Shown here in pieces: positions 12,552-63,021 of a DNA stretch of 64,000 nt (position 1 is the first letter of the stretch; each line of letters begins with the position of its first letter). Made by a program: the position numbers and the translations under genes. The stretch is from the NCBI RefSeq assembly GCF_036588685.1, contig NC_086386.1, positions 61,070,001 to 61,134,000 of the forward strand. Reading direction: 5' to 3'. The DNA is from Mytilus trossulus (Eukaryota). The notes beneath the pieces are model-generated. The model made no database searches, had not been told where the DNA came from, and saw only the letters and a program-made list of their open reading frames with translations.

Positions 12552-14556
12552 ATGTTGTTAGGTTTCTTCTACCTGTCTGTTCTTATTGTATGTGGAGAAA
12601 TAAACATGACTATAGAATCAGAGTTGGGTATGTACATTGCATACGTTTAGTTTATGCTTTAAAAAAAAATTATAATGTGGAAAAATAATCTTTATAAGAG
12701 AGTAAATGACAAGTTCACAAAAAAAAAAACGGATTAAAAAATTGGTAAAAAGCTCTAAGATAAAGATGGAAATTAAAATAAATCATATTAAGCAGAGGTC
12801 GCGGACGCTCGTCCTATGTTCACGACAAGGGAAAGGACGTTGACTATAGACTAAAATTAAGAATGGAAATGGGGAATGTATCAAAGAGACAACAACCCGA
12901 CCATACAGAAAAAAGCAACAGCGGAAGGTCACCAACAGGTCTTCAATGTAACGAGAAATTCCCGAACCCGGAGGTGGACTTCAGCTGGTCCCTAAACAAA
13001 TATATACTTGTTCAGTGATAATGAACGCCATAAAATATATATATATATTGGCTAGTACCCGGGGGTTCTTTGACACAAGTTTAACAATGGTCATACACAC
13101 TTTTACTTAGTTTTCAAAAAAAAGTTGGCACATAAAAAACACTTATACATACGCATGGATGTTTGCTTTGTAGATTCAACTTCTTTTAACGGAATTCAGT
13201 ATGACAACCATTAAGATTTAGTTTTAAAACATGTAAAGTTGTTGCCAAACTTACGACTGTTGACTTGTGTAAACGCTCTGCTTATTTATTTACAGCCTGT
13301 TCAGAAAAATCTAACATTGTCAACAAAGTAAAATTGTTGTGTAATGACATTGGAGCTGGTGGCAATGCGGGTGAGACTAAATTAAATATTTTCATAATCC
13401 TCTGCAGGCTTCAGGCTAGATGAAAATTTAGTTCAAAATATATTTTCTTTTATAGAACTTACATTGTTAAGCTTAAATTCAGACTACGTATGTTGTTTTG
13501 TGCTTCAATCAGTCTCGTTGTTTTCTCGTTTGAATGTTTTTAAATTATCTTTTCAATGGTGTTTTTTTTTTTGCTAACTATGCGGTCTGGGTTTTGTTCA
13601 TTGTTGAAGACATCACGCTGACATATAGTTTATATGTCATTTGGTCTCTGGTGGAGAGTTGTTTCATTGGTAATCATACCACATCTTCTTATTTTTTATA
13701 CTAGCCCTGTATAACCATGAAGGTGATCCGACGGAGAACGGCTGTCGTAAGGTAAACGTATATATGAGGCTAAAGAAAACAACCATAACCGGCACTGAAT
13801 TGTGTAGTTACAAAGAAAGAGTATCGGCTATAACAATCCTAATAAAAAAAAATTTTTTTTTTTAAATGTGAACAAGAAATCGTATTGATCAATATTTTGG
13901 CACAACAAATGACCCTCGTTAATGTCGAGCCCTGTTTAATTATGATTAAACGGTCCATTGTAAAGTTTATTTATTTAAGACAAAAAGAGTGATTATAAGT
14001 CAGACCTGGGATAAACAATATTTCATAATTTGTAATAAATTATAATGCAATTTTACAAAAAACAAAATGATTGCAATGACAAAAAGGACGATGATTTATA
14101 TATATTTTGATTACCTCTCAATACTGAAATTGCATTTTGTGTTTTTTTCCAGTGCATCCCAACACTTACACTGGTGTGTCGATTTTCACAGCTTCTGTGA
14201 GTAGGAGGAAATACGTGGTAAAAGGAAATATCGTGAGATTTGACAAAGTATGGTCAAACATCGGCAATAACTACGATCCACGCTCTGGTGTATATACAAC
14301 ACCAAAGGATGGTGCATATCATTTCTCTTGTACAGTGATGTCTCAAGGTAACAATGGCATTCGCGTCAACCTTTGGAAAAATGACGTAAAGACTGTTGCA
14401 ATTTATTCATATGGTTCTTATGGTGGAACACTGAATATGGCGCTTGACTTGAAAAGGGGGGACAGAGTGTACATTAAACAAAGTCATGTTGAAAACTACA
14501 TTTATGCTGAGCCGGAATATCATTTCAGTATGTTTTCTGGCTTTCATATTTCCTGA
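12552..14556 (+). CDS. C1q-domain-containing protein 1 (secreted globular C1q), 3 coding exons
   Basis: Exon 1 12552-12627 (signal peptide MLLGFFYLSVLIVCG; alternative in-frame ATG at 12540). Exon 2 13296-13370 (ACSEKSNIVNKVKLLCNDIGAGGNA). Exon 3 14153-14556 (gC1q: FTAS..FDKVWSNIG..YDPRSGVYT.P.DGAYHFS..L.RGDRVYI..FSMFSGF). All introns GT-AG, phase 1. AATAAA at 14616. Confidence 0.88.
12854..13032 (-). repeat. Interspersed repeat family 2 (in C1qDC-1 intron 1)
   Basis: gaatggaaatggggaatgtatcaaagagacaacaacccgacc...cagctggtccctaaacaaatatata. Reverse copies at ~34645-34815 and ~11150-11210, fragment at ~52198. Confidence 0.7.
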
Positions 14557-15458
14557 GAAACTTTATCACTTATATATCGACATACTGGTATCGTATCTAC
14601 AAAGAATATCACTGCAATAAAATATGTATACATTTACATTGTCTTTTAATGACTTAAACCTAGCCGATTTTAGAATGCATTTCCATCATGTATACCAAAA
14701 TTGGATTGCCCGGGTTAGACTATATACTTGGGTGATACCAACACTTTGACGTTTGAATTAGGTTTTAGATTTTCAATTATTTTTGCCTCTCCGATCTCAG
14801 AAGTAACATTTGTTTAATTGTGCATCTGGTGTAGAAACATGTTATTAATTGCAAGTTCGAAGATATTTTATTGTATTTGGAGACTTTAGACTATCGAATC
14901 GAAAATGATGCTAGCCAATCCAGATGCTATACAGGTATCTAAGTACTAACTCAACTGAACGAAAACACTTCTTAAACATACATTTCGAAATCAGTCAATC
15001 ATACTGTGGCTTTCTTTAATATATTTTTTTTTTCATTCGCAATATATGACAAACAAGAACAACAAAAAACATTTTTTAGACCGTATAGTAAGGTATAAAC
15101 CCCAAAATAACAATAAACCGACGAAGAAGGAACATAAAAGCTCATTAGTCGAAGATAAATTGATCCGTCATGTCAAAAAAAAGAAGAAAAAAACGACGAA
15201 AAGACTACATTCAGAAAAAGACAGCTTCAAAGAGCTAGCAACACTAACACCTTCAATAGCGGGGGTAATATAAGGTGTGTCGAAAGGGTAAGCAAATCCT
15301 GCTCCTCATTTTGGGAATCGTCGTCACGGTTCCTTGTGTAAGCACAGAATTCTACGATAAGTCTCTTTTTGAGTTGTCAATTTCGAAAGAAAAAAAAATA
15401 TAACGGGATTGACGTTACAAGAATATTTAAACATGCATATATATATATATATATATAT

Positions 15459-15797
15459 AAACGCCTAAAAAGTGTACATAACAACACCAATCACACAAAA
15501 AGGAACTATAAATGTAATTATTTATAAATATTTCGGATAACAGATATCCTTCGTCAGTCAAATTCTGATTTTAACATCAGAATTTGACTGACGAAAGAAT
15601 TTGACTGACGAAGGATATCTGTTATCCGAAATATTTATAAATAATTACATGTATAGTTCCTTTTTGTGTTATTGGTGTTGTTATGTACACTTTTTAGGCG
15701 TTTATATTATAATTTATTTTATTGTGTACATGTATCGTTACTTGTAACGATCCAGCGCCCTCGTGGGAAAAATCGTTGACTATTATTCAGACGTTTT
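15459..15797. mobile_element. Module C: short head-to-head (fold-back) non-coding Penelope-type element with hammerhead motifs
   Basis: 15459-~15570 is the inverted copy of ~15596-15705. A 17-bp local duplication agaatttgactgacgaa lies near the centre. Bounded by (TA)n on both sides. Confidence 0.75.
15600..15642 (+). ncRNA. Minimal hammerhead ribozyme-like motif (module C); mirrored on the minus strand at ~15520-15562
   Basis: CTGACGA-A-GGATA-tctgt-TATCC-GAAA-TATT: intact CUGANGA and GAAA cores with a 5-bp stem II. Stem I is weak. Confidence 0.65.
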
Positions 15798-15807
15798 ATA
15801 TATATAT

Positions 15808-16530
15808 ACCTGTTAGTCAAATGCGTTTTGTTTAAATATACTTTTTCACGCTTTTGGTCTTTTGGAAAATGTTGTTTGTGCTGTTTTTAGACCCTTCTAC
15901 AACGAAATTTGTTTGACATGCACACGTATAAAAATTGCGGTTTTTATCCAACGCAGTCATAGGTTTGAACGTAGTTTTCAATTTAGACTCGTTTATATTT
16001 TTTGTTTGGGCATGTAACATATTTTCCCTCCGGTTTATATGATCCGTTCATCCTATATATTGACTCTTAAAATTCAAGAGTTAATCTAAAAATGAGGGTA
16101 CTTTCTCTAAAAATTGAGGGTACTTTTTATATGGCCTTCCAAATACCGTTTCGATCCCTAACATCACTGAAGAGACATTTATTGTCGAAATCCGGATATG
16201 GTGTACTTAAGAAATATTGACACCGAATGTTTGTGGCACAACATCCTGTCCACAAGTTAACAATTTTTTTTTTTCTGTGACGTATCAATTTTATTTGGCA
16301 GTCGTCAATGGCAGTCAGCAGGGTTAAAGAACATCAGTTGTTCGACCTGTTAGTCAAATGCGTTTTGTTTAAATATACTTTTTCACGCTTTTGGTCTTTT
16401 GGAAAATGTTGTTTGTGCTGTTTTTAGACCCTTCTACAACGAAATTTGTTTGACATGCACACGTATAAAAATTGCGGTTTTTATCCAACGCAGTCATAGG
16501 TTTGAACGTAGTTTTCAATTTAGACTCGTT
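15808..16530 (+). mobile_element. Module A (left): hammerhead-bearing partial tandem (retrozyme / non-autonomous PLE), period 537 bp
   Basis: ~185-bp direct terminal repeat (15808-15992 and 16345-16530) around an internal segment containing the hammerhead. (TA)n on both sides. Confidence 0.8.
16161..16204 (+). ncRNA. Type I minimal hammerhead ribozyme (module A left)
   Basis: ACATCA-CTGAAGA-GACA-tttat-TGTC-GAAA-TCCGGA-TA-TGGTGT: stem I, core, stem II, palindromic stem III (ATCCGGAT), AUA cleavage triplet. Confidence 0.85.
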
Positions 16531-16552
16531 TATATATATATATATATATATA

Positions 16553-16620
16553 ACCATAAATTTGCGAAAGCAAATTTACAGATCTAACATTGTTGGTTTG
16601 ATGTTTAGACGAGTTGTATT
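16553..16620 (+). repeat. Module B 3' fragment
   Basis: aaatttgcgaaagcaaatttacagatctaacattgttggtttgatgtttagacgagttg is the reverse complement of 20726-20790. Flanked by (TA)n. Confidence 0.8.
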
Positions 16621-16801
16621 TATATATATATATATATAGTGTCTAAAAATAGCAACAATCAACATTCAATCTATATAGGTGTGGATCAGTTTGTAAATAA
16701 ACTGATGCAGTTACTAAATTGAATTATATAAGTGTCTAAGAATGTAACTTTAACACACTTATGAGTGTTATAAAATTAGGTGTTATATTTTATATATTAT
16801 T

Positions 16802-16842
16802 CACGCAATATTTCGCTAAACAAATTAGCTTCATCGGGCGTG
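16802..16842 (-). ncRNA. Hammerhead-like motif in PLE 3' UTR (left arm)
   Basis: Mirror image of 19251-19291. Confidence 0.6.
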
Positions 16843-17028
16843 TGCATCTATCAAGGTGAAATCGGATGCATGACAAAAAATATCTTTGTAGCTTGAGCTA
16901 CACAAAAGTTTAACATATTGATTAATGATCTGTATAAAACATTTTTTTGCCGTTTATTGTACATAAACATTTTTTTCAAAAATTTAAACAAATAGTTGTT
17001 TTAGTTAAATAGAAGTAAAATTGATGAG

Positions 17029-17961
17029 TTATTCCTTTGCTTTCGGGTAGAACTGTTTTTCATCCCTCTCATTAAGTCCATCAGGTTCAAGAGTACGTAG
17101 CTGATGCATCCAGAACCTTTCTCTCTTTTTCCTCATTTCTGAGTCCCAATTTTGGTTTACCTCAATTATTTGAAAGGTGATATTTTCAAAGGTATGTCCT
17201 GTTCTTAAGAGGTGTCTCGTAATTGGACAGTTTCTTCCTTTTGTATAAAACGACCGATGATTGTTTAGTCTGATGTTAAATGTGGTTTCTGTTTCACCAA
17301 CATATTGCAGCTTGCAAGTTCCACAAGTAAGAATATAAATACTATTTTCCGTTTTGCAATTAGATGTAACATAGATGTTGTATCGCTGCTTTGTTACTGT
17401 GCTGCTGAAAGAGTGGTCAGTGTTGGCGGCTTTACAGCACTTACAGTTCCTTCTACCGCATTGTTTGTAACACCCAAATTTTGAAGTTTCTTGTTTCTTT
17501 ACTTTTGATGTCACAAGTATGTCTTTGAGATTTTTGGGTCTGCGATAGGCAATAAGAGGAGGTGATGGAAAAATTTCTTTTAAGGACGAGTCATTTTCGA
17601 TTAGACGCCAGTGCTTTCGGATAAAAGATGAAATATTTGTCAAATCGGGATGGAATGTTACAACAAACGGAATTCTATCTGCACGGGTCGCCTTATTTTT
17701 GTATTCCATGAGGCTAGCTCGATCTTTTTCTTTAGCTTTATCAAAAGCGTCTGTGATGTTTTTGGTTTTATATCCTCTTGATTTCAGCTGTGTTTTTAGT
17801 TGTCCCAAACGATAGTTGAGTTTGGATTCAGAGGAGCAAATTCGCTTTAGTCTGATGGCTTGACTGTAAGGTATACTCCTGGAGCAGTGTTTCGGATGAA
17901 AACTTTTTGGAGAAAGGAACTGGTGTTTATCAGTTTTCTTTGTGTGGAGGTCAGTTGTCAT
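17029..17961 (-). CDS. PLE polyprotein C-terminal part: RT thumb, Cys-rich linker, GIY-YIG endonuclease (left copy)
   Basis: S.HP.H..RSIPYSQA.R..RIC thumb motif, CGRRNCKCC linker, IYILTCGTCKLQYVGET..RLNNH GIY-YIG, E.FW..L.T..P.GLN. The frame continues upstream through IKFT..FLD (RT motifs 6-7) to the palindrome centre. Confidence 0.88.
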   Translation of the reverse strand: MTTDLHTKKTDKHQFLSPKSFHPKHCSRSIPYSQAIRLKRICSSESKLNYRLGQLKTQLKSRGYKTKNITDAFDKAKEKDRASLMEYKNKATRADRIPFVVTFHPDLTNISSFIRKHWRLIENDSSLKEIFPSPPLIAYRRPKNLKDILVTSKVKKQETSKFGCYKQCGRRNCKCCKAANTDHSFSSTVTKQRYNIYVTSNCKTENSIYILTCGTCKLQYVGETETTFNIRLNNHRSFYTKGRNCPITRHLLRTGHTFENITFQIIEVNQNWDSEMRKKRERFWMHQLRTLEPDGLNERDEKQFYPKAKE

Positions 17962-18132
17962 GATCCCGTTTTTTACAAATGTGGTGGTGTCGAGAAAAGC
18001 AATTTTCTCGCTTGAAAATTCAGATGTAAATTTAATTAAATTTAATTTAAATACTCAATTAAATTTACATCTGAATTTTCAAGCGAGAAAATTGCTTTTC
18101 TCGACACCACCACATTTGTAAAAAACGGGATC

Positions 18133-19065
18133 ATGACAACTGACCTCCACACAAAGAAAACTGATAAACACCAGTTCCTTTCTCCAAAAAGTTGTCATCC
18201 GAAACACTGCTCCAGGAGTATACCTTACAGTCAAGCCATCAGACTAAAGCGAATTTACTCCTCTGAATCCAAACTCAACTATCGTTTGGGACAACTAAAA
18301 ACACAGCTGAAATCAAGAGGATATAAAACCAAAAACATCACAGACGCTTTTGATAAAGCTAAAGAAAAAGATCGAGCTAGCCTCATGGAATACAAAAATA
18401 AGGCGACCCGTGCAGATAGAATTCCGTTTGTTGTAACATTCCATCCCGATTTGACAAATATTTCATCTTCTATCCGAAAGCACTGGCGTCTAATCGAAAA
18501 TGACTCGTCCTTAAAAGAAATTTTTCCATCACCTCCTCTTATTGCCTATCGCAGACCCAAAAATCTCAAAGACATACTTGTGACATCAAAAGTAAAGAAA
18601 CAAGAAACTTCAAAATTTGGGTGTTACAAACAATGCGGTAGAAGGAACTGTAAGTGCTGTAAAGCCGCCAACACTGACCACTCTTTCAGCAGCACAGTAA
18701 CAAAGCAGCGATACAACATCTATGTTACATCTAATTGCAAAACGGAAAATAGTATTTATATTCTTACTTGTGGAACTTGCAAGCTGCAATATGTTGGTGA
18801 AACAGAAACCACATTTAACATCAGACTAAACAATCATCGGTCGTTTTATACAAAAGGAAGAAACTGTCCAATTACGAGACACCTCTTAAGAACAGGACAT
18901 ACCTTTGAAAATATCACCTTTCAAATAATTGAGGTAAACCAAAATTGGGACTCAGAAATGAGGAAAAAGAGAGAAAGGTTCTGGATGCATCAGCTACGTA
19001 CTCTTGAACCTGATGGACTTAATGAGAGGGATGAAAAACAGTTCTACCCGAAAGCAAAGGAATAA
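18133..19065 (+). CDS. PLE polyprotein C-terminal part: RT thumb, Cys-rich linker, GIY-YIG endonuclease (right copy)
   Basis: Same as the left copy except for 3 aa differences (F/C, C/Y, F/S). The RT catalytic core is absent because of 5' truncation. Confidence 0.88.
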   Translation: MTTDLHTKKTDKHQFLSPKSCHPKHCSRSIPYSQAIRLKRIYSSESKLNYRLGQLKTQLKSRGYKTKNITDAFDKAKEKDRASLMEYKNKATRADRIPFVVTFHPDLTNISSSIRKHWRLIENDSSLKEIFPSPPLIAYRRPKNLKDILVTSKVKKQETSKFGCYKQCGRRNCKCCKAANTDHSFSSTVTKQRYNIYVTSNCKTENSIYILTCGTCKLQYVGETETTFNIRLNNHRSFYTKGRNCPITRHLLRTGHTFENITFQIIEVNQNWDSEMRKKRERFWMHQLRTLEPDGLNERDEKQFYPKAKE

Positions 19066-19250
19066 CTCATCAATTTTACTTCTATTTAACTAAAACAACT
19101 ATTTGTTTAAATTTTTGAAAAAAATGTTTATGTACAATAAACGGCAAAAAAATGTTTATTCAGATCATTAATCAATATGTTAAACTTTTGTGTAGCTCAA
19201 GCTACAAAGATATTTTTTGTCATGCATCCGATTTCACCTTGATAGATGCA

Positions 19251-19291
19251 CACGCCCGATGAAGCTAATTTGTTTAGCGAAATATTGCGTG
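19251..19291 (+). ncRNA. Hammerhead-like motif in PLE 3' UTR (right arm), U4C core variant
   Basis: CACGC-CCGATGA-A-GCTAA-tttgt-TTAGC-GAAA-TATT-GCGTG: perfect 5-bp stems I and II, minimal palindromic stem III, CCGAUGA in place of CUGAUGA. Confidence 0.62.
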
Positions 19292-19746
19292 AATAATATA
19301 TAAAATATAACACCTAATTTTATAACACTCATAAGTGTGTTAAAGTTACATTCTTAGACACTTATATATATATATATATATATATATACGAGTCTAAATT
19401 GAAAACTACGTTCAAACCTATGATTGCGTTGGATAAAAACCGCAATTTTTATACGTGTGCATGTTAAACAAATTTCGTTGTAGAAGGGTCTAAAAACAGC
19501 ACAAACAACATTTTCCAAAAGACCAAAAAAGTGAAAAAGTATATTTCAACAAAACGTATTTGACTAACAGGTCGAACAACTGATGTTCTTGAACCCTGCT
19601 GACTGCCATTGGCGATTGCCAAATAAAATTGATCACAAGATGTAACAAAATGGATCTTAAAATAAATCTAATACTAAACAGAAAAACTTTTTAAACTTGT
19701 GGCCGCGATGTTATGCCACAAACATACGGTGTCAATATATCTTAGT

Positions 19747-19790
19747 ACACCAGATCCGGATTTCGACAATAAATGTCTCTTCAGTGATGA
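19747..19790 (-). ncRNA. Type I minimal hammerhead ribozyme (module A right, unit 1)
   Basis: Reverse complement reads CATCA-CTGAAGA-GACA-tttat-TGTC-GAAA-TCCGGA-TC-TGGTG (AUC triplet). Confidence 0.85.
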
Positions 19791-20316
19791 TAGGGATCGA
19801 AACGGTATTTGGAAGGCCATATTAAGAGTATCCTCATTTTAAGAAAAAGTACCCTAATTTTTAGATAAACTCTTGAATTTAAAGAGTCAATATAGGATGA
19901 ACGGATCATATAAACCGGAGGGAAAATATGATACAAAGCCCAAACAAAAAAATATAAACGAGTCTAAATTGAAAACTACGTTCAAACCTATGATAGCGTT
20001 GGATAAAAACCGCAATTTTTATACGTGTGCATGTTAAACAAATTTCGTTGTAGAAGGGTCTAAAAACAGCACAAACAACATTTTCCAAAAGACCAAAAAA
20101 GTGAAAAAGTATATTTCAACAAAACGTATTTGACTAACAGGTCGAACAACTGATGTTCTTGAACCCTGCTGACTGCCATTGGCGATTGCCAAATAAAATT
20201 GATCACAAGATGTAACAAAATGGATCTTAAAATAAATTTAATACTAAACAGAAAAACTTTTTAAACTTGTGGCCGCGATGTTATGCCACAAACATACGGT
20301 GTCAATATATTTTAGT

Positions 20317-20360
20317 ACACCAGATCCGGATTTCGACAATAAATGTCTCTTCAGTGATGT
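20317..20360 (-). ncRNA. Type I minimal hammerhead ribozyme (module A right, unit 2)
   Basis: Same motif as 19747-19790, 570 bp away. Confidence 0.85.
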
Positions 20361-20725
20361 TAGGGATCGAAACGGTATTTGGAAGGCCATATTAAGAGTA
20401 TCCTCATTTTAAGAAAAAGTACCCTAATTTTTAGATAAACTCTTGAATTTAAAGAGTCAATATAGGATGAACGGATCATATAAACCGGAGGGAAAATATG
20501 ATACAAAGCCCAAACAAAAAAATATAAACGAGTCTAAATTGAAAACTACGTTCAAACCTATGATTGCGTTGGCTAAAAACCGCAATTTTTATACGTGTGT
20601 ATGTTCAACAAATTTCGTTGTAGAATGGTCTAAAAACAGCACAAACAACATTTCCCATAAGGCCAAAAAAGTGAAAAAGTATATTTCAACAAAACGCATC
20701 TGACTAACAGGTCATATATATATAT

Positions 20726-21547
20726 AACTCGTCTAAACATCAACCCAACAATGTTAGATCTGTAAATTTGCTTTCGCAAATTTTTGGTTCTTCTCTCGCC
20801 GGGATTCGAACCCATGCTACTGTGATATCGTGACACCAAATCGCCTGCACTGCAGTCGTCCCGCTAGACCACATGACCACCTGGGCTCTAAAAAAAGAGC
20901 TTTCGCTGGCCATGTGTTACCTTTCCACGTCAGTTTTAATCTAGCGGCGTACTACAGTACATGATATATAAGGCATGAAGATGTTATTGTTACAGATCAA
21001 CTAAATTATCCATAGTAAAGGATCCTACAAATTATTGTAAGATACAGTCACAGAAAATAATTATATTCATAAGTACGTCTGAGTCAGTGACAACCCTACA
21101 ACAGATGTATCCATCGGATCGCCATTAATGATGGTTATACATGGCTGTGTACATAATGTATATACAACTCGTCTAAACATCAACCCAACAATGTTAGATC
21201 TGTAAATTTGCTTTCGCAAATTTTTTGTTCTTCCCTCGCCGGGATTCGAACCCATGCTACTGTGATATCGTGACACCAAATCGCCTGCACTGCAGCCGTC
21301 CCGCTAGACCACACGACCACCTGGGCTCTCAAAAAAAGAGCTGTCGCTGGCCATGTGTTACCTTTCCACGTCAGTTTTAATCAAGCGGCGTACTACAGTA
21401 CTTGCTATATAAGGCATGAAGATGTTATTGTTACAGATCAGCTAAATTATCTATAGTAAAGGATCCTACAAATTAATGTAAGATACAGTCACAGAAAATA
21501 ATTATATTCATAAGTACGTCTGAGTCAGTGACAACCCTACAACAGAT
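20726..21547 (-). mobile_element. Module B: 440-bp tandem (~1.9 units) with an internal tRNA-like Pol III promoter
   Basis: aactcgtctaaacatc at 20726 and 21166. Minus-strand A box (TGGTC(A/G)TGTGG) and B box (GGTTCGAATCCC) within 20791-20886 and 21231-21326. A T7 run lies just upstream of each head. (TA)n on both sides. Confidence 0.8.
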
Positions 21548-22168
21548 ATATATATATATATATGTTTGTTGTCATTTGTAATCATTTAGATGCAGCTCCC
21601 TTGTAACATTTTAATGACACTAACAATCGTATTCGGTTTCTAAAAACTTATTATGTTAAAGAATACTTCGGTTGATGATCTTTGTGCCATACAAAAAGTT
21701 GTACCAACCTCGACTTCGTCTCGGATAACATTTATATATTTAGATGCAGTCTACCAAAACACACTAAACTATCGACAAATAGTTTATTCTATGTAAAACA
21801 CAGTTTAATATAAAAATAAGGAGAATTTTGAATAACCAAATCTGAAAATGAATTAGACAAAATACATAAATCTAAAGCTGAAAACCGAAAAAGCTTGCTT
21901 AACAAGTTGGACAACTATTTCTCTAAACAGCACCAATCTTTATTAAAAGTCGGTCAATTTTGAAGCTGTGTTTACTTAAAAGTGAAACTATTGTACCTAT
22001 CAATACAATAGCATGATATATACATACAAGAGGTATACTATTTCAGTATGATATTACAAGGGACACGGTAACATATTTAAGATCAGAACATGCATAAAGT
22101 ATACACTGCTAGGACAAACATTAAACACACTCGGAAGAAACGATAGATTAATTTCTAAAGAGGACAGT

Positions 22169-23443
22169 ATGCCTCTTTTCTTCTTCGTGTCTGTTCTGAT
22201 TTGGTGTGGAGAAATATGTATGACGCAATGTTCCAGTTGGGGTATGTAAAATAGAATATACAACTATATTATCATGATCCTTGTCCAATCAGAAGAAGGA
22301 TTTGCAAAATTTGGTCGTTTTTTACGCCACAATATTTTCTCGTATTAAAAACAAACGCATGTGCATATCTAGCTTTTAAAAGAGTAAGAATATCCAGCCT
22401 GTTAAAAAAAAGCGAATCGAGTTATATATACAACACCATCATGACATGCATGATCAAAATAAAACTTGCCACTCTGGTTCACTGGTTAACATATTAAGAA
22501 TATCTTATATGCATACACCCCCTTTTCAAAAATTCGCACCTGGAGTGATAGAACTAATTTTAATCAGATTAATTACTACAGTGTATCGACGATAAATTGT
22601 GCCAATGATAGTAAATTGATTACAATGGTAAAAAAAATCTTCACTAGCACTGTCGGAACATTGAAATTACAGCTGCAACATACCAGTCATGTGCAACTTC
22701 TTACAATATCTTACCATATCATTTATGTTCCGATACACATTTTAATATGCACCCACCATTCCATATAGCATCGTCCCTTTGTGCCTCCTGCAGTTCAGCT
22801 AAATATATAGTTAGCCTACTTTCTAGGGGTGTGTCAGAGACGAAGGTTTTATAAATACTCCTGTATATTATAATACATGAAAACTGTTGTTTCTTTTTTG
22901 TGTTTGTAACTATGTTTACTGTTGTTTTATTTTATATTTGTACAAGAATAATATTATAATGATATCATAGCATGCTCCTTGTGACTCACAAGTTGTGAGC
23001 CCAGTTTATGGAAATAAAGCATATTCTTCTTCTTTTCTATTGATTTTTTAGGTGCGTCGGGTTTCTCAGCTTCTATAAGTAAAAGTAAACACGTGGTCAG
23101 AGGAGGCATCATAAGATTTGACAAAGTATGGAGCAACATAGGGAACAATTTTGATCAATATTCTAGTGTGTATACAGCTCCAAGAAATGGCGCATACCAT
23201 TTCTCATGTACCGTAATGTCTCATAGAAACAATGCTATTCGAGTCAATCTGTGGAAAAATCACTCAAAGACTGTTGCAGTTTACTCGAATAGTCACTATG
23301 GTGGTACACTCAATATGGTACTTGACCTAAAGAGAGGAGACAGGGTGTACATTAAACAAGGTCATGTTGAAAACTACATATATGCTGAACCTGATTATCA
23401 TTTCAGTATGTTTTCTGGCTTTCTCATTCAAGTTCATGAGTAA
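22169..23443 (+). CDS. C1q-domain-containing protein 2 (secreted globular C1q), 2 recognisable coding exons
   Basis: Exon 1 22169-22241 (MPLFFFVSVLIWCGEICMTQCSSW, paralogous to gene 1 exon 1, GTATGT donor). Exon 2 23052-23443 (gC1q, closely similar to gene 1). The phase-1 join keeps the frame. AATAAA at 23488. Confidence 0.87.
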
Positions 23444-24975: not shown

Positions 24976-26840
24976 ATAGATTAGCTCATTGGGTAGATGA
25001 TAACAATGTACTGGCGGACGAGCAGAATGGTTTCCGGCAACAACGTAGTACAATTGACCAATTGTCTAGTCTTACTAATTTGATTGATGTAAGAAAAAAA
25101 CTTCGTAAATCAACCTTTTGCGCCTTTATTGATTTTAAAAAGGCTTACGACACTATACAAAGGGATATTTTATGGTATAAATTAAATAAAATGGGTGTTG
25201 CACAGACTTTTTGTTCTGCTATTAAGTCAATTTATACAAATGTTTTATGTTCTGTAAGAATAAACGGTCATTTCACAGACTGGTTTGATGTTAACTGTGG
25301 CTTGAAACAAGGATGTCCCTTGTCGCCCATTTTGTTCAACTTGTATATTAATGATTTAGTTACATTTCTTAAGTCCTTTGACTGCGGAATAGAAATAGGT
25401 GATGAAAAACTATGTATTTTGTTATATGCTGATGACGTTGTAATTATAGCAAACGATGAAAAAGAACTTCAACTTATGTTAAATGCTTTATCTACATGGT
25501 GTAAAGACAATTGTATGAAAATTAATGCAAACAAGAGTAACATTGTACATTTTAGACCGCCATCTATACCTAGATCTGGTGTAATTTTTAATTGTAATGG
25601 TCATACTATTAAGTTTTCTAGTAATTATACTTATCTTGGTCTCGTTTTAAACGAGCATTTAGACTATAATGTTACTGCAAAAGCCGTTGCATCTTCAGCA
25701 AATAGGGCTTTAGGGTTGGTAATAGCCAAGTGTAAACTTTTAGGTGGTGTTTGTTTCGATGTATTTGTAAAATTATATGAAAGTTTAGTTTGTCCTATAA
25801 TAGAATATGGAGCAGGTATATGGGGTGTAAAATCATATTCTTGTATTAACTCCATTCATAATAGGGCTTGTAGATTTTTTCTCGGTGTAGGAAAATATGC
25901 ACCAAATGCTGCAGTTACTGGAGACTTAGGTATAACACCTATTTTTGATAAGCAGTGGAAAAGTATTATTCGTTTGTGGTGTAGATTAAATAACATGAGC
26001 TCAAACCGTTTAAATGCGAAAGTTCACAAGTGGGCTGATAGTATGAGTATTAAGCATAAGTGTGTCAAAAACTGGAATTTTGTAGTAAAGAAAACCTTCT
26101 GTGAACTAAATTTAAGTCATTTATCGTGTCCTGAAAATATGGACACTAACTATGTTATAAAAAATTTTATGTCAAAATTACATAGAAAACATGTCGATAA
26201 TTGGCATGCTGTTTTGCATTCTGATAAATCTATATCGGGTAGAGGTGGCAATAAGCTACGAACTTACAGACTGTTTAAGGAAAATTTTGAACCAGAGGAA
26301 TACTGCAAAATAGCTTTACCCTTCAGTCACAGAAGTGCTTTCGCCAAATTTAGATGTGGTGTTGCTCCCCTTAGAATTGAAACAGGGAGATATGAAAATA
26401 TTGTTTTAGAAAATAGAGTGTGCCATATATGTGACGTTTTTATTGAAGATGAAGCGCATGTTTTATTAAGATGTCCTCTTTATGACGATTTTAGAAACCA
26501 TTTATATCATGTTGCTGAAACTTTTAATGATAATTTTGATACTTTAGATGATAATCAAAAGTTAGTGTTTTTATTCTCAGATGTAAATATGATTCGTGTG
26601 TGTGCCAAAACCTGTCATTTAATTTTAAAAAGACGTAGGAATTTTATATATTGTACATAATATTTTATTTCATATTATGTATTATTATTATCTATGCATT
26701 TTAATAGTCTCTTATAATTCTGTATAGAATGGCTCTCATTTTATTTAGTGTTATTTTACAATGTTACTATTGTATAAAGATTGATTGTACTTGTTGAGAG
26801 ATGAGACTTTAATAAAACATTGAATTGAATTGAATTGAAT
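24976..26840 (+). mobile_element. 5'-truncated non-LTR retrotransposon (CR1/L2-group LINE)
   Basis: RT homology from ~24972 (EQNGFR..RSTIDQ), 3' UTR with AATAAA and a (TTGAA)4 tail. 9-bp TSD TATAAAGCA at 24967-24975 and 26841-26849. Confidence 0.9.
25062..26660 (+). CDS. LINE ORF2 fragment: reverse transcriptase and C-terminal Cys/His domain
   Basis: FIDFKKAYD, GLKQGCPLSPILF, LLYADD, YTYLG, C..C....EDE.H....C. Uninterrupted frame, but no APE endonuclease domain and no true start codon. Confidence 0.88.
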   Translation: MSSLTNLIDVRKKLRKSTFCAFIDFKKAYDTIQRDILWYKLNKMGVAQTFCSAIKSIYTNVLCSVRINGHFTDWFDVNCGLKQGCPLSPILFNLYINDLVTFLKSFDCGIEIGDEKLCILLYADDVVIIANDEKELQLMLNALSTWCKDNCMKINANKSNIVHFRPPSIPRSGVIFNCNGHTIKFSSNYTYLGLVLNEHLDYNVTAKAVASSANRALGLVIAKCKLLGGVCFDVFVKLYESLVCPIIEYGAGIWGVKSYSCINSIHNRACRFFLGVGKYAPNAAVTGDLGITPIFDKQWKSIIRLWCRLNNMSSNRLNAKVHKWADSMSIKHKCVKNWNFVVKKTFCELNLSHLSCPENMDTNYVIKNFMSKLHRKHVDNWHAVLHSDKSISGRGGNKLRTYRLFKENFEPEEYCKIALPFSHRSAFAKFRCGVAPLRIETGRYENIVLENRVCHICDVFIEDEAHVLLRCPLYDDFRNHLYHVAETFNDNFDTLDDNQKLVFLFSDVNMIRVCAKTCHLILKRRRNFIYCT

Positions 26841-42600: not shown

Positions 42601-45600
42601 AATTCTAAAGCTGTCAATTAAATTAACCAGTCATAGTAAACTAAGAAAACAAATTTTAAACAATTTTTTTCCCCAACTGTAACAAATTTTCGCAAGGAAA
42701 TAAGATTTTTTAAAGCCGCATTTCAATATCAACCATTTACAGATAAATTTAAGGAAAGAAAAAAATACCATAAAATTATTTAAAATTTAAAAAAAATGTG
42801 AACAATAATTAATGACTTTTTTCTGAAGGCATCAATTTCAAAATATTTATTCCCCCTATGGACCCCTAATTTGTCAGTTACACCTGACCAGTAAGATAAT
42901 TAACAGGTATCATAGTGTGACCTGTCAAGATGTCCAGTATCTCTATCATAGAACCTACTGGCTGGAGGGGTATGATACTAGATGACCAGTTTTACTGGAC
43001 TTTTACTGTTAGATCTTTTTACAAATATGACTAATGAACTGTAATAAATGACAAACTAGTAGAAGAAGATATCATGCATTTATTGCATAATTTAATATGT
43101 CCTTTAATTTCTCATTTATCACTTACTTAATATTGTGTTATTTTTATGAAAAAAGCCTAAACTGATACAAGTTTTTAATATTTGTTCCCAGAAACTCAAA
43201 CTGAACATTTCCAGACAATTCATTACTTTTAAATCAATTTCTTACTTCTTGTATGATTTGTTTAGAATAAAAGCACCTATTTATAAAGGATAAAATAACC
43301 TTCTTTTCAAGCATTTTTAACAGCAGGTTGAGCAAAATTTTTATAATCATGATAATTCTGGATTTTTTTTATTAACTTACATAAATGTTTCGCAAAAAAT
43401 ATCTTTATTGCAATGAATTTTTCAAGCTCCTTTGAGCAAACTTTACAAGCACTAAATACAAAATAACAAACCTGTTTTTCATTTGAGTTGGGACTAATAC
43501 TCCTTTGGAAGCTGTTATCGAAAGATGTGCCTGGTGAAAATGATACTTCTTTTCTTTTCTTATCGCCATTTTCAAATGAATCCGGCAGAGAAGTGTTGGA
43601 GGTGGAATGTTCAGAATAGCCAGTCTGCATCGGAACTCCAAGTGGACCATTTCCAGCCGTGTATTTCTGTTCTTGTCTTTTCTTATCAATTTTCCATAAG
43701 AAATAAATTGTCAATCCTATGGCTGCCGAGATAAGTAAAGTTACGATTACCACAATTATTGAAATTGTAATATACTTATTTGAATCTCCATTAGCAGATA
43801 AATGTGTTGAATTACTGATGATTACCAGAACATTTAAATCGGCACAATCAGAATGGACGGGATTTCCAGCATCTTGAACACATACTCGAATACTTTGCGA
43901 CGTATCCTTCGAAAAATGATATTGTTTGTTGAGAAAAAGTTCTCCAGATGTAGGATTCAAATAAAACATATTTGCTTCATTCCCGGAGAAAATATAATAT
44001 GATAATTGTCTATTGACACCAATATCTTTATCCTCGGCAATAATGGTCGTAACAGGAAGTGATGTTATTGCCGTAGTAACAGTATTATTTCCTTTTTTAG
44101 GAAATAAAATTGTTGGTTCATTATCGTTTACATCCAAAACTGTTATAATTACTTGAACAGAGTTATTTTTTGATGGAATTCCTTTATCAGTGGCAAACAC
44201 AACAAAACTATATTGACTGTGTTTCTCACGATCTAAGATTTCTCGTGTTCTAATTGTTCCGTCTAAAAGAACCACAAACGGTACAGTGAACTGGTCTTTT
44301 TCAGCAATGGTGAAGGAAACATCCCCATTTAAACCATCATCTTTATCAATAGCTACAACTGAACCAACAGTTTCATCTGGTTTCAGACCTTCAGCAACCT
44401 CAAATGCAAATCTACTTTTATTGAAGACAGGTATATTGTCATTTTCGTCACGAATGGTAACAATCACAGATGCTGTTCCCGTCCTTCTTGGATCGCCATT
44501 ATCTACTGCCAAAACATGAAACATGTGCTCCGACTGCTTTTCTCTATCATAAATATCACTAGCAGATATAACTCCAGTGTTAGAATTAATAGCAAACTTA
44601 GATACAGCGTCACTGTGTAGAAAATATTGAATATCAGCATTGATACCGATGTCCTTATCCCTGGCCGAAACTTGTTTGATTGGATTTCCCAATTTATTAT
44701 TTTCATCCACATAAGCTAAGTATACTTTCTCCAAAAATTCTGGATCATTGTCATTATCATCTGATACTGTCACATTAAAACTTGCTTCCGCACTGAGTCT
44801 CGGTGTTCCATAATCATGACAAACAATGGTGACAATATGAGCATCTTGTTTTTCTCTGTCTAATTTCTGCTTCACAACAACTTTAAATCCTTTATCAGAC
44901 ACTGGTAGTTTTTTAACATCAAAATAAGGATTAGGCGTTGAGCATGTTACATTACCATTGTTCCCAATATCAGAATCTTCAACATTCACATGAGCGACAA
45001 AATTATCAATGTTGGTTGCTTCTGACAGCATCACAACACCACCAGTTCCAGCAGACGGTAAGTTAATCTTGACGACAGGCTTGTTGTTGCCAACATCTTC
45101 AACTTTGACATTGACCTTGACCTGTGAAATCTGAGGACTTGTTCCATGATCACTTGCCTCTACGATAATACTATATTCCTCATTAGGTTCGTAAACTAAA
45201 TTCTTTAGCAGAGTTATATCCCCTGAATCACTACCAATACTAAAGAACTGGTTGATACTCTCTAAATCTGTCTGCACCTGACTGAAATGATAGGAGACAA
45301 GTCCATTTTGGTCTTTATCTGGATCTTCAGCGGTCACTTTTAGAATGACAGTATTTGGCGGAACATCTTCCCGAACTGTAACATTGTACATTGGCAAGCC
45401 AAATTTAGGTGCATGGTCGTTTACATCCAGGACAGTCACATCAATGTTTAGTATACCAGTTTGAGGCTGTTCCCCACCATCCTTGGCTGCTATCTGTAAT
45501 GTATATGTTTCTTTAAACTCTCGATTCAATGGTTGTTTTAAAACTATATGGAGGAGAAAACTGCCATCTAATTTTTTGGTATTGTTAAGTCCAAAAGGTC

Positions 45601-46144
45601 CATTGTCTGGATAAATATCGTAATTTTGGATCCCATTTCTTCCGGTATCTTTATCCAATGCTGCTGGGACTGAAAAACGTGTCCCTACAGGTGTAGATTC
45701 AGACACGTTTAATTTCATTATGGGTTGTGGAAAAGATGGAGCATGATCGTTGATATCCTGTACATGAATGGAAGTAGTAATCAACTTGAAAAAGTTTGTT
45801 TTTTGTGAGTTGGCTACAAAATTTAACACAAGAATACAATCAGAAACATCACTGCATTCTGGAATTATTTCTCGATCAATCAGCATGATAGTTTGTAAAG
45901 CACCTGTAGATTTGTCAATTGAAAACATATTTTGATAAACATTATCTCCAATGTAACCATAACTAATACTATCAAATTCTTCACTCGTCAAGTTTTCTGT
46001 TAATCTAGCCTCAGTGGCAATATTCCCCACAGGAGTATTCATAGGCAGTTCTTCCTGAATTGAGAACGAAATCTGTATGGTGTCATCTCCAAAACATGCC
46101 ACAAAGAATAAAGTCAAAATCGAAAGATAAAATGAATAGCACAT
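36612..46144 (-). CDS. Protocadherin, delta1-like (7 cadherin repeats, TM, CM1-like motif), ~1111 aa, 4 coding exons
   Basis: Exon 46144-43472 encodes the signal peptide, 7 EC repeats with DRE/DxNDxxP/AxDxG motifs and the TM (acceptor at 46220, so a non-coding exon lies further upstream). Exon 39189-39076. Exon 38404-38290 (DNHSDSSGETTTSDSGRGGSE, CM1-like). Exon 37045-36612 ends in DLVV. Phases 0/0/1 are consistent and introns are GT-AG. Confidence 0.9.
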
Positions 46145-62565: not shown

Positions 62566-63021
62566 ACAAGAATGTGTCCACAGTACACGGATGCCCCACT
62601 CGCACTATCATTTTCTATGTTTAGTGGACAGTGAAATTGATATAAATTCTCAAATTTGGCATTAAAATTAGAATGATCTTATCAAGGGAACATGTATACT
62701 AAGTTTCAAGTTGATTGGACTTCTACTTTATCAAAAACTACCTTGACCAAAAACTTTAACCTGAAATTTGCACTATCATTTTCTATGTTTAGTGAACCGT
62801 AAAATTGGGGTAAAAACTCTAATTTGGCATTTAAATTAGAAAGATCAAATCATAGGGCACATGTATACTAAGTTTCAAGTTGATTGGACTTCAACTTCAT
62901 CAAAAACTACCTTGACCAAAAACTTTAACCTGAAGCAGGACAGACGGACGAACTAACAGATGAACAGACGCACAGACCAGAAAACATAATGCCCCTCTAC
63001 TATCGTAGGAGGGGCATAAAA
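62566..63021 (+). mobile_element. Helentron/HINE (DINE-1/pearl-like) element with two 168-bp core repeats
   Basis: gcactatcattttctatg at 62602 and 62770, GACA/GACG microsatellite at ~62938-62978, terminal hairpin atgcccctctactatcgtaggaggggcat. Related decayed copy at ~27640-27985. Confidence 0.78.

What the first reader, a model, noticed from the sequence alone, without database searches (positions are those of the whole stretch)
20726..21547. Module B: a circularly permuted, tandem tRNA-headed element, possibly a Penelope-dependent SINE
Seen: A and B boxes sit inside the 440-bp unit rather than at its 5' end. A T7 Pol III terminator in a GCTCT-T-run-AGAGC hairpin lies immediately before each head. 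A GAAA-tetraloop hairpin (AAATTTGC-GAAA-GCAAATTT) follows the head. There is no TSD or poly(A), and the ends abut (TA)n with the shared TAGAC motif. Inference: Pol III could make a roughly unit-length RNA from one head to the next terminator, and the permuted insertion ends point to a circular or multimeric template copied by the PLE RT. SINEs normally depend on LINEs, so a PLE-mobilised tRNA-promoter element would be unusual.
Basis: partly seen in the sequence, partly recalled or inferred. Interest (0 to 1): 0.78.

Follow-up and report, generated by a model that had tools for sequence, protein, structure and literature searches.

The report
Non-coding Penelope-style tandem retroelement
A 441-base non-coding repeat that carries a tRNA-like piece is one copy of a young family of thousands that lands in TA microsatellites the way Penelope-like retroelements do, so it is a ribozyme-less variant of a known kind of genomic parasite, not a classical SINE.

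Summary
The 441-bp tandem (1.9 units, window 20726-21537, sense = minus strand) is one copy of a very young family. Exact-match counts for the whole genome give 3,246 ends in (TA)n and 3,631 unit-to-unit joints.

Support for Penelope-like (PLE) mobilisation:
- Copies share a fixed 3' end, ...TTTAGACGAGTT(G)+(TA)n.
- 5' ends are scattered; 29 of 40 copies are shorter than one unit.
- Multimers are head-to-tail with an invariant joint, and inverted partners occur.
- An active RT+GIY-YIG PLE in the same nest ends in TTAGACAC(T)+(TA)n.

PLE-type copying of a multi-unit RNA is therefore well supported, but the evidence is circumstantial.

The 'Pol III SINE' part is not supported:
- ARAGORN and Rfam find no tRNA.
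- Only 3 of 40 copies start at the head.
- The T-run is the loop of a larger hairpin and is replaced in subfamilies.
- Abundant strand-biased RNA runs through head, T-run and unit joint without a step.

No hammerhead was found, and RNA circles remain untested. The scan noted this family twice before on other pieces of this genome. I class it as a new variant of a known kind.

The parts
20714..20725 (.). (TA)n abutting the element's fixed 3' end
20726..21537 (-). Module B array: one full 441-bp unit plus a second unit 5'-truncated at unit position about 381-385
20726..20763 (-). 3' tail ending ...GGGTTGATGTTTAGACGAGTT; least variable part of the unit (0.0028 minor-allele instances per site)
20764..20783 (-). 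GAAA-loop hairpin (second copy at 21204-21223); recurrent 5' limit of short copies at unit positions 52-58
20797..20886 (-). tRNA-derived segment (second copy at 21237-21326): B box 20802-20812, A-box-like 20861-20871
20885..20900 (-). GCTCT-T7-AGAGC hairpin (second copy at 21325-21341); apex of a longer imperfect hairpin
20840..20975 (-). long imperfect hairpin: the A-box half of the head pairs with a diverged inverted copy upstream
   Evidence: whole-unit fold, z -4.15; 10-nt arms; local alignment, 2 of 500 shuffles as good
20924..20940 (-). discrete end of RNA molecules at 20924, 11 nt 3' of the unit's only ATTAAA (20935-20940) on the sense strand
   Evidence: 261, 300 and 214 molecules begin there in three runs; reading as a poly(A) site is inference
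21062..21166 (-). 5' sub-module of the unit (unit positions 337-441) with its own end motif CAGACGTACTTAT, used as an alternative 3' end in other copies
21538..21564 (.). (TA)n at the truncated 5' side
16553..16617 (+). separate 64-nt copy of the Module B 3' end (hairpin plus tail) between two (TA)n tracts
   Evidence: (I14)
18057..19362 (+). 5'-truncated Penelope-like element: 310-aa open frame with GIY-YIG, ending TTCTTAGACACT+(TA)13
16639..18037 (-). inverted partner of that PLE fragment, ending at the distal site ...TTTTTAGACAC+(TA)n
19389..20713 (-). Module A, an unrelated 570-bp tandem with the same kind of end (TTTAGACTCG+(TA)n), directly beside Module B

Best explanation
Module B is a non-autonomous retroelement that is copied into (TA)n microsatellites by the machinery of a GIY-YIG Penelope-like element. 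It is not a LINE-dependent, Pol III-defined SINE. Its sense strand is the window's minus strand.

Shown:
- The family is dispersed and young.
- It has one fixed 3' end next to (TA)n and 5' ends scattered along the unit.
- Head-to-tail multimers have an invariant joint, and inverted partial copies lie beside them.
- Abundant strand-biased RNA crosses the unit joint.
- An active RT+GIY-YIG PLE family with the same target and the same kind of end is present.

Inferred:
- A multi-unit sense RNA, probably not made by Pol III, serves as template.
- The nicked (TA)n target primes on the UAUAUA that follows ...UUUAGACGAGUU(G) at every unit joint. It sometimes primes instead on the TA-rich site after CAGACGUACUUAU.
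- The RT runs for a variable distance, often across several units.
- The 5' end is joined back into the microsatellite by TA microhomology or to an inverted copy.
- The conserved hairpin-plus-tail at the 3' end is the likely RT recognition part.
- The tRNA-derived segment is a captured remnant whose promoter use is unproven.
For: - Fixed 3' end: every uncut array in 30 top-scoring loci ends at unit position 1 (...TTTAGACGAGTT[G/A]+(TA)n) or at the second site near position 337-346.
- Whole-genome exact counts are 3,246 ends in (TA)n, 3,631 unit-unit joints and 5,541 heads. The reversed-pattern controls gave 0.
- Unbiased sample: the first 43 ends listed on contig C1. Of these, 29 are shorter than one unit, 5 hold 1-2 units, 6 hold 2 or more, and 3 run beyond the 2.6 kb fetched. 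The 5' positions range from 42 to 400. (TA)3 lies at the 5' flank in 21 of 40.
- The joint is invariant: GTATATAC in 60, ATATATAC in 16 and GTTTATAC in 2 of 78 joints.
- The family is young. For 74 full units, the mean difference is 0.78% within arrays and 1.38% between arrays, and some arrays are 0-0.2%.
- Inverted partial copies and 30-58-nt end fragments lie beside arrays. Passages of PMC8557442 describe the same for PLE insertions.
- PLE partner: the search gave 4,184 candidates, of which 128 were scored, with copies at 99-100% identity and open frames up to 959 aa. A 775-aa frame holds RVT_1 at 291-455 and GIY-YIG at 672-755. Its 3' ends are TTAGACAC(T)+(TA)n at two sites, and diverged subfamilies end in TTAGACAT or TTAGGCA.
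- AGAC lies within 14 nt of a (TA)n tract in 54 of 257 distinct ends, against 7 of 257 in a control window.
- The 3' tail is the least variable part of the unit.
- RNA: first-mate-on-plus depth is about 100 times first-mate-on-minus. Depth at the unit joint is about 1,290, 1,595 and 1,060. Only 17-24 reads at 21159 and 24-57 at 20714 carry a (TA)n flank.
Against: - No homology to the PLE beyond short motifs. BLAST of units A and B against 12 PLE loci finds only neighbouring insertions. Eight 80-nt tails align at 52% mean column identity with 2 invariant columns.
- 19 of 40 5' flanks lack (TA)3.
- Higher similarity within arrays could also come from unequal crossing-over after insertion.
- The sense of the RNA rests on the usual library convention.
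- At 9 listed places at least 97% of the reads of X21 carry another letter than the window, so the window's own copy is not shown to be transcribed.
- Nothing here shows that the RNA is the template, or which PLE clade does the work. Naiad elements, which passages of PMC8557442 say prefer (TA)n, were not examined.
- The loci behind the motif counts were picked for Module B and the PLE, so those counts are not an unbiased genome sample.
Confidence: 0.72

Rival explanations
1. It is a true Pol III SINE that uses a PLE instead of a LINE. The A and B boxes drive transcription from the head, RNAs end at the next T-run, and these RNAs are the template.
For: - The B box is a perfect 11/11 match, the A box is 9/11, and the boxes are 47 nt apart.
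- The boxes are kept in most units: 62 of 74 share one A-box string and 70 of 74 one B-box string.
- T>=6 is present in 61 of 74 units.
- Two independent copies start exactly at AGCCCAGG with non-(TA) flanks (L014 and L057).
- 3 of 40 5' ends fall at unit positions 160-165, where about 0.5 is expected if ends were uniform (my arithmetic).
Against: - 37 of 40 copies do not start at the head.
- 491 genome places have a non-G base before AGCCCAGG. Of the 9 distinct contexts I could read, 7 were internal apex variants and only 2 were real ends. Neighbouring control positions gave 45 and 120 places.
- RNA depth shows no step at the head or across the T-run.
- The T-run is the most variable segment, and subfamilies replace it with other loops.
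- ARAGORN and Rfam find no tRNA.
- The libraries are ordinary long-RNA libraries, so a minor small Pol III RNA cannot be excluded.
Confidence: 0.15
2. The template is a unit-length circular RNA copied by rolling-circle reverse transcription, as proposed for animal retrozymes, but made without a hammerhead.
For: - The joint is invariant and some arrays have identical units.
- RNA reads at unit position 1 almost always continue into position 441.
- The whole unit folds much better than shuffles: -131.7 against -108.6 kcal/mol, z -4.15.
- Mussel retrozymes accumulate as circles (PMC7229834, passages).
Against: - No self-cleaving ribozyme family was found at E<=1, and the hammerhead core pattern gave no match.
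- Genomic tandems give the same joint reads, so the RNA data cannot tell circles from multimers.
- The only discrete RNA end (20924) is one-sided, unlike a cleavage site, which should give both a begin and an end.
Confidence: 0.2
3. It is a satellite that spreads and grows at the DNA level (unequal crossing-over, segmental duplication, extrachromosomal circles), with no RNA step.
For: - Arrays of more than 10 units exist.
- Units are more alike within arrays than between arrays.
- Two loci on different chromosomes (L007, L008) share the same complex 5' structure.
Against: - Thousands of dispersed sites share one precise end in (TA)n.
- 29 of 40 sampled copies are sub-unit fragments truncated only on the 5' side.
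- Flanks differ from site to site.
- The asymmetry of fixed 3' and variable 5' ends is the mark of target-primed reverse transcription.
Confidence: 0.06
4. It is carried by a DNA transposon: a Helitron/Helentron with internal tandem repeats, or a TA-duplicating MITE.
For: Insertion in TA-rich DNA.
Against: - The element shows no terminal inverted repeats. Its 3' end is ...GAGTT(G), not CTRR (consensus recalled). Its hairpin lies 38 nt, not about 10 nt, from the end.
- 5' ends vary, and no constant 5' terminus exists.
Confidence: 0.03

Closest known systems
Animal non-LTR retrozymes (Cervera and de la Pena 2020, PMC7229834, passages read; Li et al. 2026 preprint 10.64898/2026.07.22.740005, abstract and discussion read)
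   Same: Both have non-coding units of a few hundred bases in dispersed tandems, from dimers to large multimers. Both are strongly transcribed, co-exist with PLEs, and are argued to be their non-autonomous partners.
   Different: Retrozymes are defined by a type I hammerhead in each unit, and in mussels by units of about 350-390 bp. Module B is 441 bp, has no hammerhead detectable by Rfam or by the core pattern, and carries a tRNA-derived segment. Circular RNA is not shown here.
Non-autonomous Chlamys PLE derivatives such as MRC1 (Craig et al. 2021, PMC8557442, passages read)
   Same: Both lack an ORF, form pseudo-LTRs and multicopy head-to-tail insertions, lack a canonical hammerhead, and show a microsatellite bias.
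   Different: Those elements are in green algae and resemble their autonomous partner over the 3' end. Module B shares only TYAGAC-N2-6-(TA)n, and possibly GATCC[AG], with the PLE tail.
tRNA-derived SINEs of bivalves (PMC11481361, passages read)
   Same: Both have A-box and B-box motifs of tRNA origin, a length of 200-700 nt, and a microsatellite at the 3' end. Tandem and palindromic arrangements are reported for some.
   Different: SINE heads sit at the 5' end and define it, partners are LINEs, and TSDs are seen. Here the head is internal, 5' ends are scattered, and the target and end motif are those of a PLE.
(TA)n-targeting PLEs (Naiad, and Neptune-type with the CX2-5CxxC linker; PMC8557442, passages read)
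   Same: Both show a (TA)n insertion bias, frequent 5' truncation, partial tandems, adjacent inverted copies and short extra tails. The window's PLE has C-x4-C-xx-C just before GIY-YIG.
   Different: Those are autonomous and coding. I did not place the window's PLE in a clade by phylogeny.

Membership tests
tRNA-derived SINE (SINE2) | tRNA-related head at, and defining, the 5' end | tested here: not met
   The head lies about 280 nt inside the unit. 3 of 40 sampled copies start at unit positions 160-165.
tRNA-derived SINE (SINE2) | Head recognisable as tRNA, or A and B boxes present | tested here: inconclusive
   B box 11/11, A box 9/11, 47 nt apart. ARAGORN gives 0 calls in the window and in 59 loci. 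Rfam gives no tRNA at E<=10. No cloverleaf is predicted. The parent tRNA was not identified.
tRNA-derived SINE (SINE2) | Pol III transcript from head to T-run | tested here: inconclusive
   There is no depth step or end pile-up at the head or T-run in three stranded RNA runs. These are long-RNA libraries, and small RNA was not examined.
tRNA-derived SINE (SINE2) | LINE-derived or poly(A) tail with target-site duplications | tested here: not met
   Copies end in (TA)n, median 18 nt. Only 4 places genome-wide have an A-run after the RNA end site. TSDs are not discernible in a microsatellite.
Non-autonomous PLE partner | Frequent 5' truncation with a fixed 3' end | tested here: met
Non-autonomous PLE partner | Partial tandems or multicopy head-to-tail insertions | tested here: met
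   3,631 exact joints. 14 of 43 sampled ends carry more than one unit.
Non-autonomous PLE partner | Adjacent inverted truncated copies and short extra tails | tested here: met
   L002, L003, L007, L008, L015, L017, L028-L030
Non-autonomous PLE partner | Same microsatellite target as a resident autonomous PLE | tested here: met
   PLE ends in (TA)n in the window and in 7 of the 10 copies of the 8 loci examined. Module B shows 3,246 ends in (TA)n.
Non-autonomous PLE partner | Sequence similarity to the autonomous element at the 3' end | tested here: inconclusive
   Only TYAGAC-N2-6-(TA)n and GATCC[AG] upstream in some families (14 of 44 against 27 of 306 clusters). No alignable homology.
Non-autonomous PLE partner | Mobilisation depends on the PLE RT/EN | not testable with these tools
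   Needs a retrotransposition assay.
Animal non-LTR retrozyme | Type I hammerhead ribozyme in each unit | tested here: not met
   No ribozyme family at E<=1 over 20000-22400. The pattern CTGANGA-N4-30-GAAAC gave 0 matches in the window. Minimal or atypical variants could escape both tests.
Animal non-LTR retrozyme | Accumulates as circular RNA | not testable with these tools
   Genomic tandems give the same joint reads.
Helitron/Helentron-borne tandem repeat | Constant 5' terminus, and a 3' CTRR with a hairpin about 10 nt before the end (recalled) | tested here: not met
   The 3' end is ...GAGTT(G), the hairpin is 38 nt from the end, and 5' ends vary.
Classical satellite DNA | Long arrays without defined insertion ends | tested here: not met
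   29 of 40 sampled copies are sub-unit fragments with one precise end.

The most novel reading that the evidence does not exclude
Module B may be a ribozyme-free counterpart of retrozymes. In this reading, a PLE-dependent element has replaced the hammerhead with host-processed RNA signals: the tRNA-derived segment, the long hairpin, and the discrete end at 20924. It would make defined unit-length or circular template RNAs, with Pol III or tRNA-processing enzymes involved. That would make it the first SINE-like family tied to Penelope-like elements rather than LINEs.
Probability: 0.12. Interest if true: 0.8.

Novelty: new variant of a known kind. Interest (0 to 1): 0.5.

Why it matters
Penelope-like elements are the least understood class of retrotransposons. 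How they start reverse transcription, why they build tandems and inverted copies, and why they prefer microsatellites are all open questions (PMC8557442, passages).

This family offers a small natural substrate. It is young, abundant and transcribed, it has no ORF and no ribozyme, and it keeps only a short conserved hairpin-plus-tail and a TYAGAC-(TA)n end. That defines the minimal cis requirements and allows a marked-element assay.

It also warns annotators. tRNA-type boxes plus a microsatellite tail meet the usual SINE criteria (PMC11481361, passage), yet the insertion pattern here is not that of a SINE.

Tried and rejected
- Hammerhead and other ribozymes. Rfam at E<=1 on 20000-22400, on 13500-20100 and on three PLE loci gave no ribozyme. 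The palindrome gave only spurious miRNA-hairpin matches. The core pattern gave 0 matches.
- tRNA identity. ARAGORN and Rfam at E<=10 on the head alone were negative. A search for the parent tRNA with RF00005 returned only one tRNA gene array on C10, and its DNA could not be fetched.
- Homology of Modules A and B to the PLE body or tail: none.
- LINE-type retroposition of polyadenylated Module B RNA. Only 4 places at up to 1 mismatch have an A-run after the RNA end site, so I rejected it as a route.
- A genome-wide count of copies starting at the head. The raw count of 491 looked like a hot spot, but it was mostly internal apex variants (7 of the 9 contexts I could read). I do not use it as support.
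- Solved structures for the PLE protein: none at E<=0.001.
- Papers. I found no description of a tRNA-bearing, hammerhead-less PLE partner in searches. This is weak evidence. Repbase and Dfam are not on hand. Supplementary files were not opened: Craig et al. file S1 with the family lists, and the mussel retrozyme sequences in the supplementary figures of PMC7229834. Either could already hold this family under another name.
- I did not identify the species. A mussel is my guess from genome size and chromosome-scale contigs, and I did not test it.
Full report
WHAT IS THERE. The window is G000:C14:61070001-61134000 of a 1.30-Gb animal genome. TRF reports a 441-bp period, 1.9 copies, 96% matches at 20719-21551.
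- a perfect B box (20802-20812, 21242-21252);
- an A-box-like motif 47 nt upstream (20861-20871, 21301-21311);
- a GCTCT-T7-AGAGC hairpin just 5' of it (20885-20900, 21325-21341);
- a GAAA-loop hairpin 3' of it (20764-20783, 21204-21223);
- (TA)n on both sides.

I number unit positions q from 20726 (q1) to 21166 (q441). The sense strand is the minus strand, so sense RNA runs from q441 down to q1.

IS IT A tRNA? ARAGORN calls nothing in the window or in 59 loci holding copies. Rfam gives no tRNA match even at E<=10 on the head alone. The head does not fold better than shuffles (z 0.29). In the fold of the whole unit, which is well above shuffles (-131.7 against -108.6 kcal/mol, z -4.15), the A-box half of the head pairs with a diverged inverted copy of itself upstream. 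The local alignment is reached by 2 of 500 shuffles, and there is a further 10-nt arm pair. The T-run is the loop of this long hairpin. So the 'head' is a tRNA-derived remnant set in a fold-back, and the 'terminator' sits where two inverted arms meet.

THE FAMILY.
- The own-genome search found 2,172 candidate places. 40 were scored, giving 171 matches at 89-100% identity on many contigs.
- Exact-pattern counts over the whole genome are 3,246 3' ends followed by (TA)4, 3,631 unit-to-unit joints and 5,541 heads. The reversed-pattern controls gave 0 in all three.
- In 30 top-scoring loci, every uncut array ends on the sense 3' side at q1 (...GGGTTGATGTTTAGACGAGTT[G/A] then (TA)n) or at a second site near q337-346 (...CAGACGTACTTAT then (AT)n). 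The 5' sides end anywhere, and inverted partial copies and 30-58-nt end fragments lie beside many arrays.
- For an unbiased sample I fetched the first 43 ends listed on contig C1. Of these, 29 are shorter than one unit, 5 hold one to two units, 6 hold two or more, and 3 run past the 2.6 kb fetched.
- The 5' positions of the 40 uncut copies range from q42 to q400, with small clusters at q52-56, q160-165 and q394-400. (TA)3 lies in the 12 nt before the 5' end in 21 of 40. The 3' (TA)n is 8-54 nt long, median 18.
- The joint between units is fixed: GTATATAC in 60, ATATATAC in 16 and GTTTATAC in 2 of 78 joints.
- For 74 distinct full units, the mean difference is 0.78% within arrays and 1.38% between arrays, and several arrays are at 0-0.2%. 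The family is therefore very young.
- The window's own two units differ by 4%.

THE PENELOPE LINK.
- The nest at 15.4-21.6 kb holds a 100% palindrome (arms 16937-18037 and 18057-19157). Each arm carries an open 310-aa frame with a C-terminal GIY-YIG domain.
- This belongs to a large family: 4,184 candidates, 128 scored, with copies at 99-100% identity and open frames up to 959 aa. A 775-aa frame holds RVT_1 at 291-455 and GIY-YIG at 672-755. This is the domain order of canonical C-terminal-endonuclease PLEs.
- Its copies end at either of two sites...ATTCTTAGACACT or ...TTTTTAGACAC, each followed by (TA)n. Subfamilies at 79% and 65% protein identity end in TTAGACAT, TTCGACAT, TTAGGCACT or TTAGGCAATC plus (TA)n.
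- Modules A, B and C end in TTTAGACTCG, TTTAGACGAGTT(G) and TTCAGACGTTTT plus (TA)n. In the window, AGAC-N1-8-(TA)4 occurs at 6 distinct ends (13 matches against 0.13 expected).
- Over all DNA held, AGAC lies within 14 nt of a (TA)n tract in 54 of 257 distinct ends. The control window gave 7 of 257, and the reverse motif gave 13 of 257. The loci were picked for Module B and the PLE, so this is not a genome-wide rate.
- A second short motif, GATCC[AG] 25-65 nt upstream, is found in 14 of 44 clusters of AGAC ends against 27 of 306 other ends. It occurs in the PLE distal tail, in Module C, and in the q441-337 part of Module B. In the two PLE subfamilies, hairpins with different stems are predicted just before it. 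This is suggestive only.
- Beyond these motifs there is no alignable homology.
- Passages of Craig et al. 2021 (PMC8557442) describe the same insertion signature for PLEs: frequent 5' truncation, partial tandems, adjacent inverted copies, 30-40-bp extra tails, and a (TA)n bias linked to the CX2-5CxxC linker. The window's protein has C-x4-C-xx-C before GIY-YIG. The same passages describe non-autonomous PLE derivatives that form multicopy head-to-tail insertions.

RNA.
- Twenty indexed runs from three organism labels and 12 studies hold part of the stretch.
- I laid four raw RNA runs of the same species label on 20600-21700. In the three stranded-looking runs, first-mate-on-plus depth is about 100 times first-mate-on-minus (for example 1,593 against 9.5). 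By the usual convention this means RNA of the minus strand, the sense strand inferred from the ends. I could not calibrate this on a known gene.
- I added the two units by unit position, from X21's depth table. Depth is about 1,080-1,340 over q359-441 and q1-210, which includes the head, the T-run and the unit joint. It is about 1,730-1,890 over q211-358.
- No pile-up of molecule ends is listed at the head or the T-run.
- Reads with a (TA)n flank at q1 are few: 17-24 at 21159 and 24-57 at 20714. Depth at the joint is about 1,060-1,600. In the genome the two contexts are nearly equal (3,246 against 3,631). Reads in long (TA)n may be under-mapped.
- 261, 300 and 214 molecules begin exactly at 20924 (q199). 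This end is one-sided, and no loose letters are listed. On the sense strand it lies 11 nt after the unit's only ATTAAA, and the extra depth lies just upstream. A poly(A) site of a Pol II transcript is my inference, and it is not shown.
- At 9 listed places at least 97% of the reads of X21 differ from the window. The reads therefore come from other copies, and this copy is not shown to be expressed.

POL III.
- Only 3 of 40 copies begin at q160-165.
- A genome count of heads preceded by a non-G base (491) looked like a hot spot next to controls of 45 and 120. Of the 9 contexts I could read, 7 were internal variants of the hairpin apex and 2 were true ends.
- These variants keep a hairpin but not the T-run. 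Among 74 units the run is T>=6 in 61, T5 in 10 and T4 in 3.
- The apex is the most variable segment (0.021 minor-allele instances per site) and the 3' tail the least (0.0028). The head (0.0085) is no better kept than the body.
- Together with read-through of the T-run in RNA, this argues that the abundant RNA is not a head-to-terminator Pol III product. A minor small RNA cannot be excluded with these libraries.

MECHANISM. Best reading, confidence 0.72:
- A multi-unit sense RNA is copied by a (TA)n-targeting PLE.
- The nicked microsatellite primes on the UAUAUA that follows the AGAC motif at each joint, or at the q337 site.
- Extension stops after a variable distance, often several units.
- The 5' end is joined by TA microhomology or to an inverted copy.

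Steps shown: the ends, the joints, the target, the RNA, and the presence of an active PLE. Steps inferred: the template, the priming site, and the partner.

Rivals are a functional Pol III SINE on PLE machinery (0.15), rolling-circle copying of an RNA circle (0.2, compatible with the main reading), DNA-level satellite spread (0.06) and a DNA transposon (0.03).

COMPARISON AND NOVELTY.
- The element works like animal non-LTR retrozymes (PMC7229834, passages; preprint 10.64898/2026.07.22.740005, abstract and discussion). It also works like the non-autonomous Chlamys elements of PMC8557442. It fails the defining hammerhead test for retrozymes.
- It meets the loose criteria used to call bivalve SINEs (PMC11481361, passage), but it fails the test that the head defines the 5' end.
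- My four literature searches found no description of such an element. Repbase, Dfam and the papers' supplements were not seen.
- Earlier notes of this scan describe the same family on two other pieces of this genome, with follow-ups reaching much the same reading. I treat these as leads, not as evidence.
- Verdict: a real feature; a new variant of a known kind; interest 0.5.

Noticed in passing
window 16639-19362: Palindrome of a 5'-truncated Penelope-like element: arms 16937-18037 and 18057-19157 are 100% complementary with 19 nt between them. Both 310-aa GIY-YIG frames are open. The two arms end at different TAGAC sites (16639 and 19362). Perfect identity could also be an assembly effect.
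   Followed up: partly
window 19389-20713 and 15808-16552: Module A is a 570-bp tandem present on both sides of the palindrome in inverted orientation. It ends in TTTAGACTCG+(TA)n. RNA reads show the same strand bias (137 against 37). Minimal variants might escape Rfam.
   Followed up: partly
window 13703-13770: A diverged relative of the 5' part of the Module B unit (unit positions 441-337). It keeps ...GTATAACCAT...GATCCGA...GG and ends in AAACG+TATATAT. That part therefore looks like a module of its own.
   Followed up: partly
window 20924: One-sided pile-up of RNA molecule ends (261, 300 and 214 in three runs), 11 nt after ATTAAA on the sense strand. A poly(A) site is possible. It is unexplained.
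   Followed up: partly
L007, L019, L023; L051, L073: 5' ends recur at unit positions 147-152. Read on the antisense strand they are ...GCTAGACCAC+(AT)n, so the A box in antisense mimics the TAGAC-N3-(TA)n end motif.
   Followed up: no
L050 2200-2320: A small palindromic PLE tail fragment ends at TTAGACACT and is joined through TATAT directly to a Module B copy truncated at unit position 307, in the same orientation. This could be a template switch or a neighbouring insertion.
   Followed up: partly
G000:C10:51257126-51302119: An array of about 60 tRNA genes (71.8 bits each) with alternating spacings of 441 and 1064 bp. The 441 equals the Module B period.
   Followed up: no
window 25062-26660: A 532-aa open frame with RVT_1 (E 8.6e-32) and a long C-terminal part. 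It looks like a LINE-type reverse transcriptase, not the PLE.
   Followed up: no
window 43307-46144: A 945-aa open frame on the minus strand with seven cadherin repeats (E 2.1e-93). It is a host gene exon.
   Followed up: no
window 14173-14472 and 23051-23350: Two 300-nt stretches that are 76% alike and 8.9 kb apart. They may be exons of paralogous genes flanking the nest.
   Followed up: no
window 62602-62934: 169-bp tandem repeat, 2.0 copies, 89% matches.
   Followed up: no
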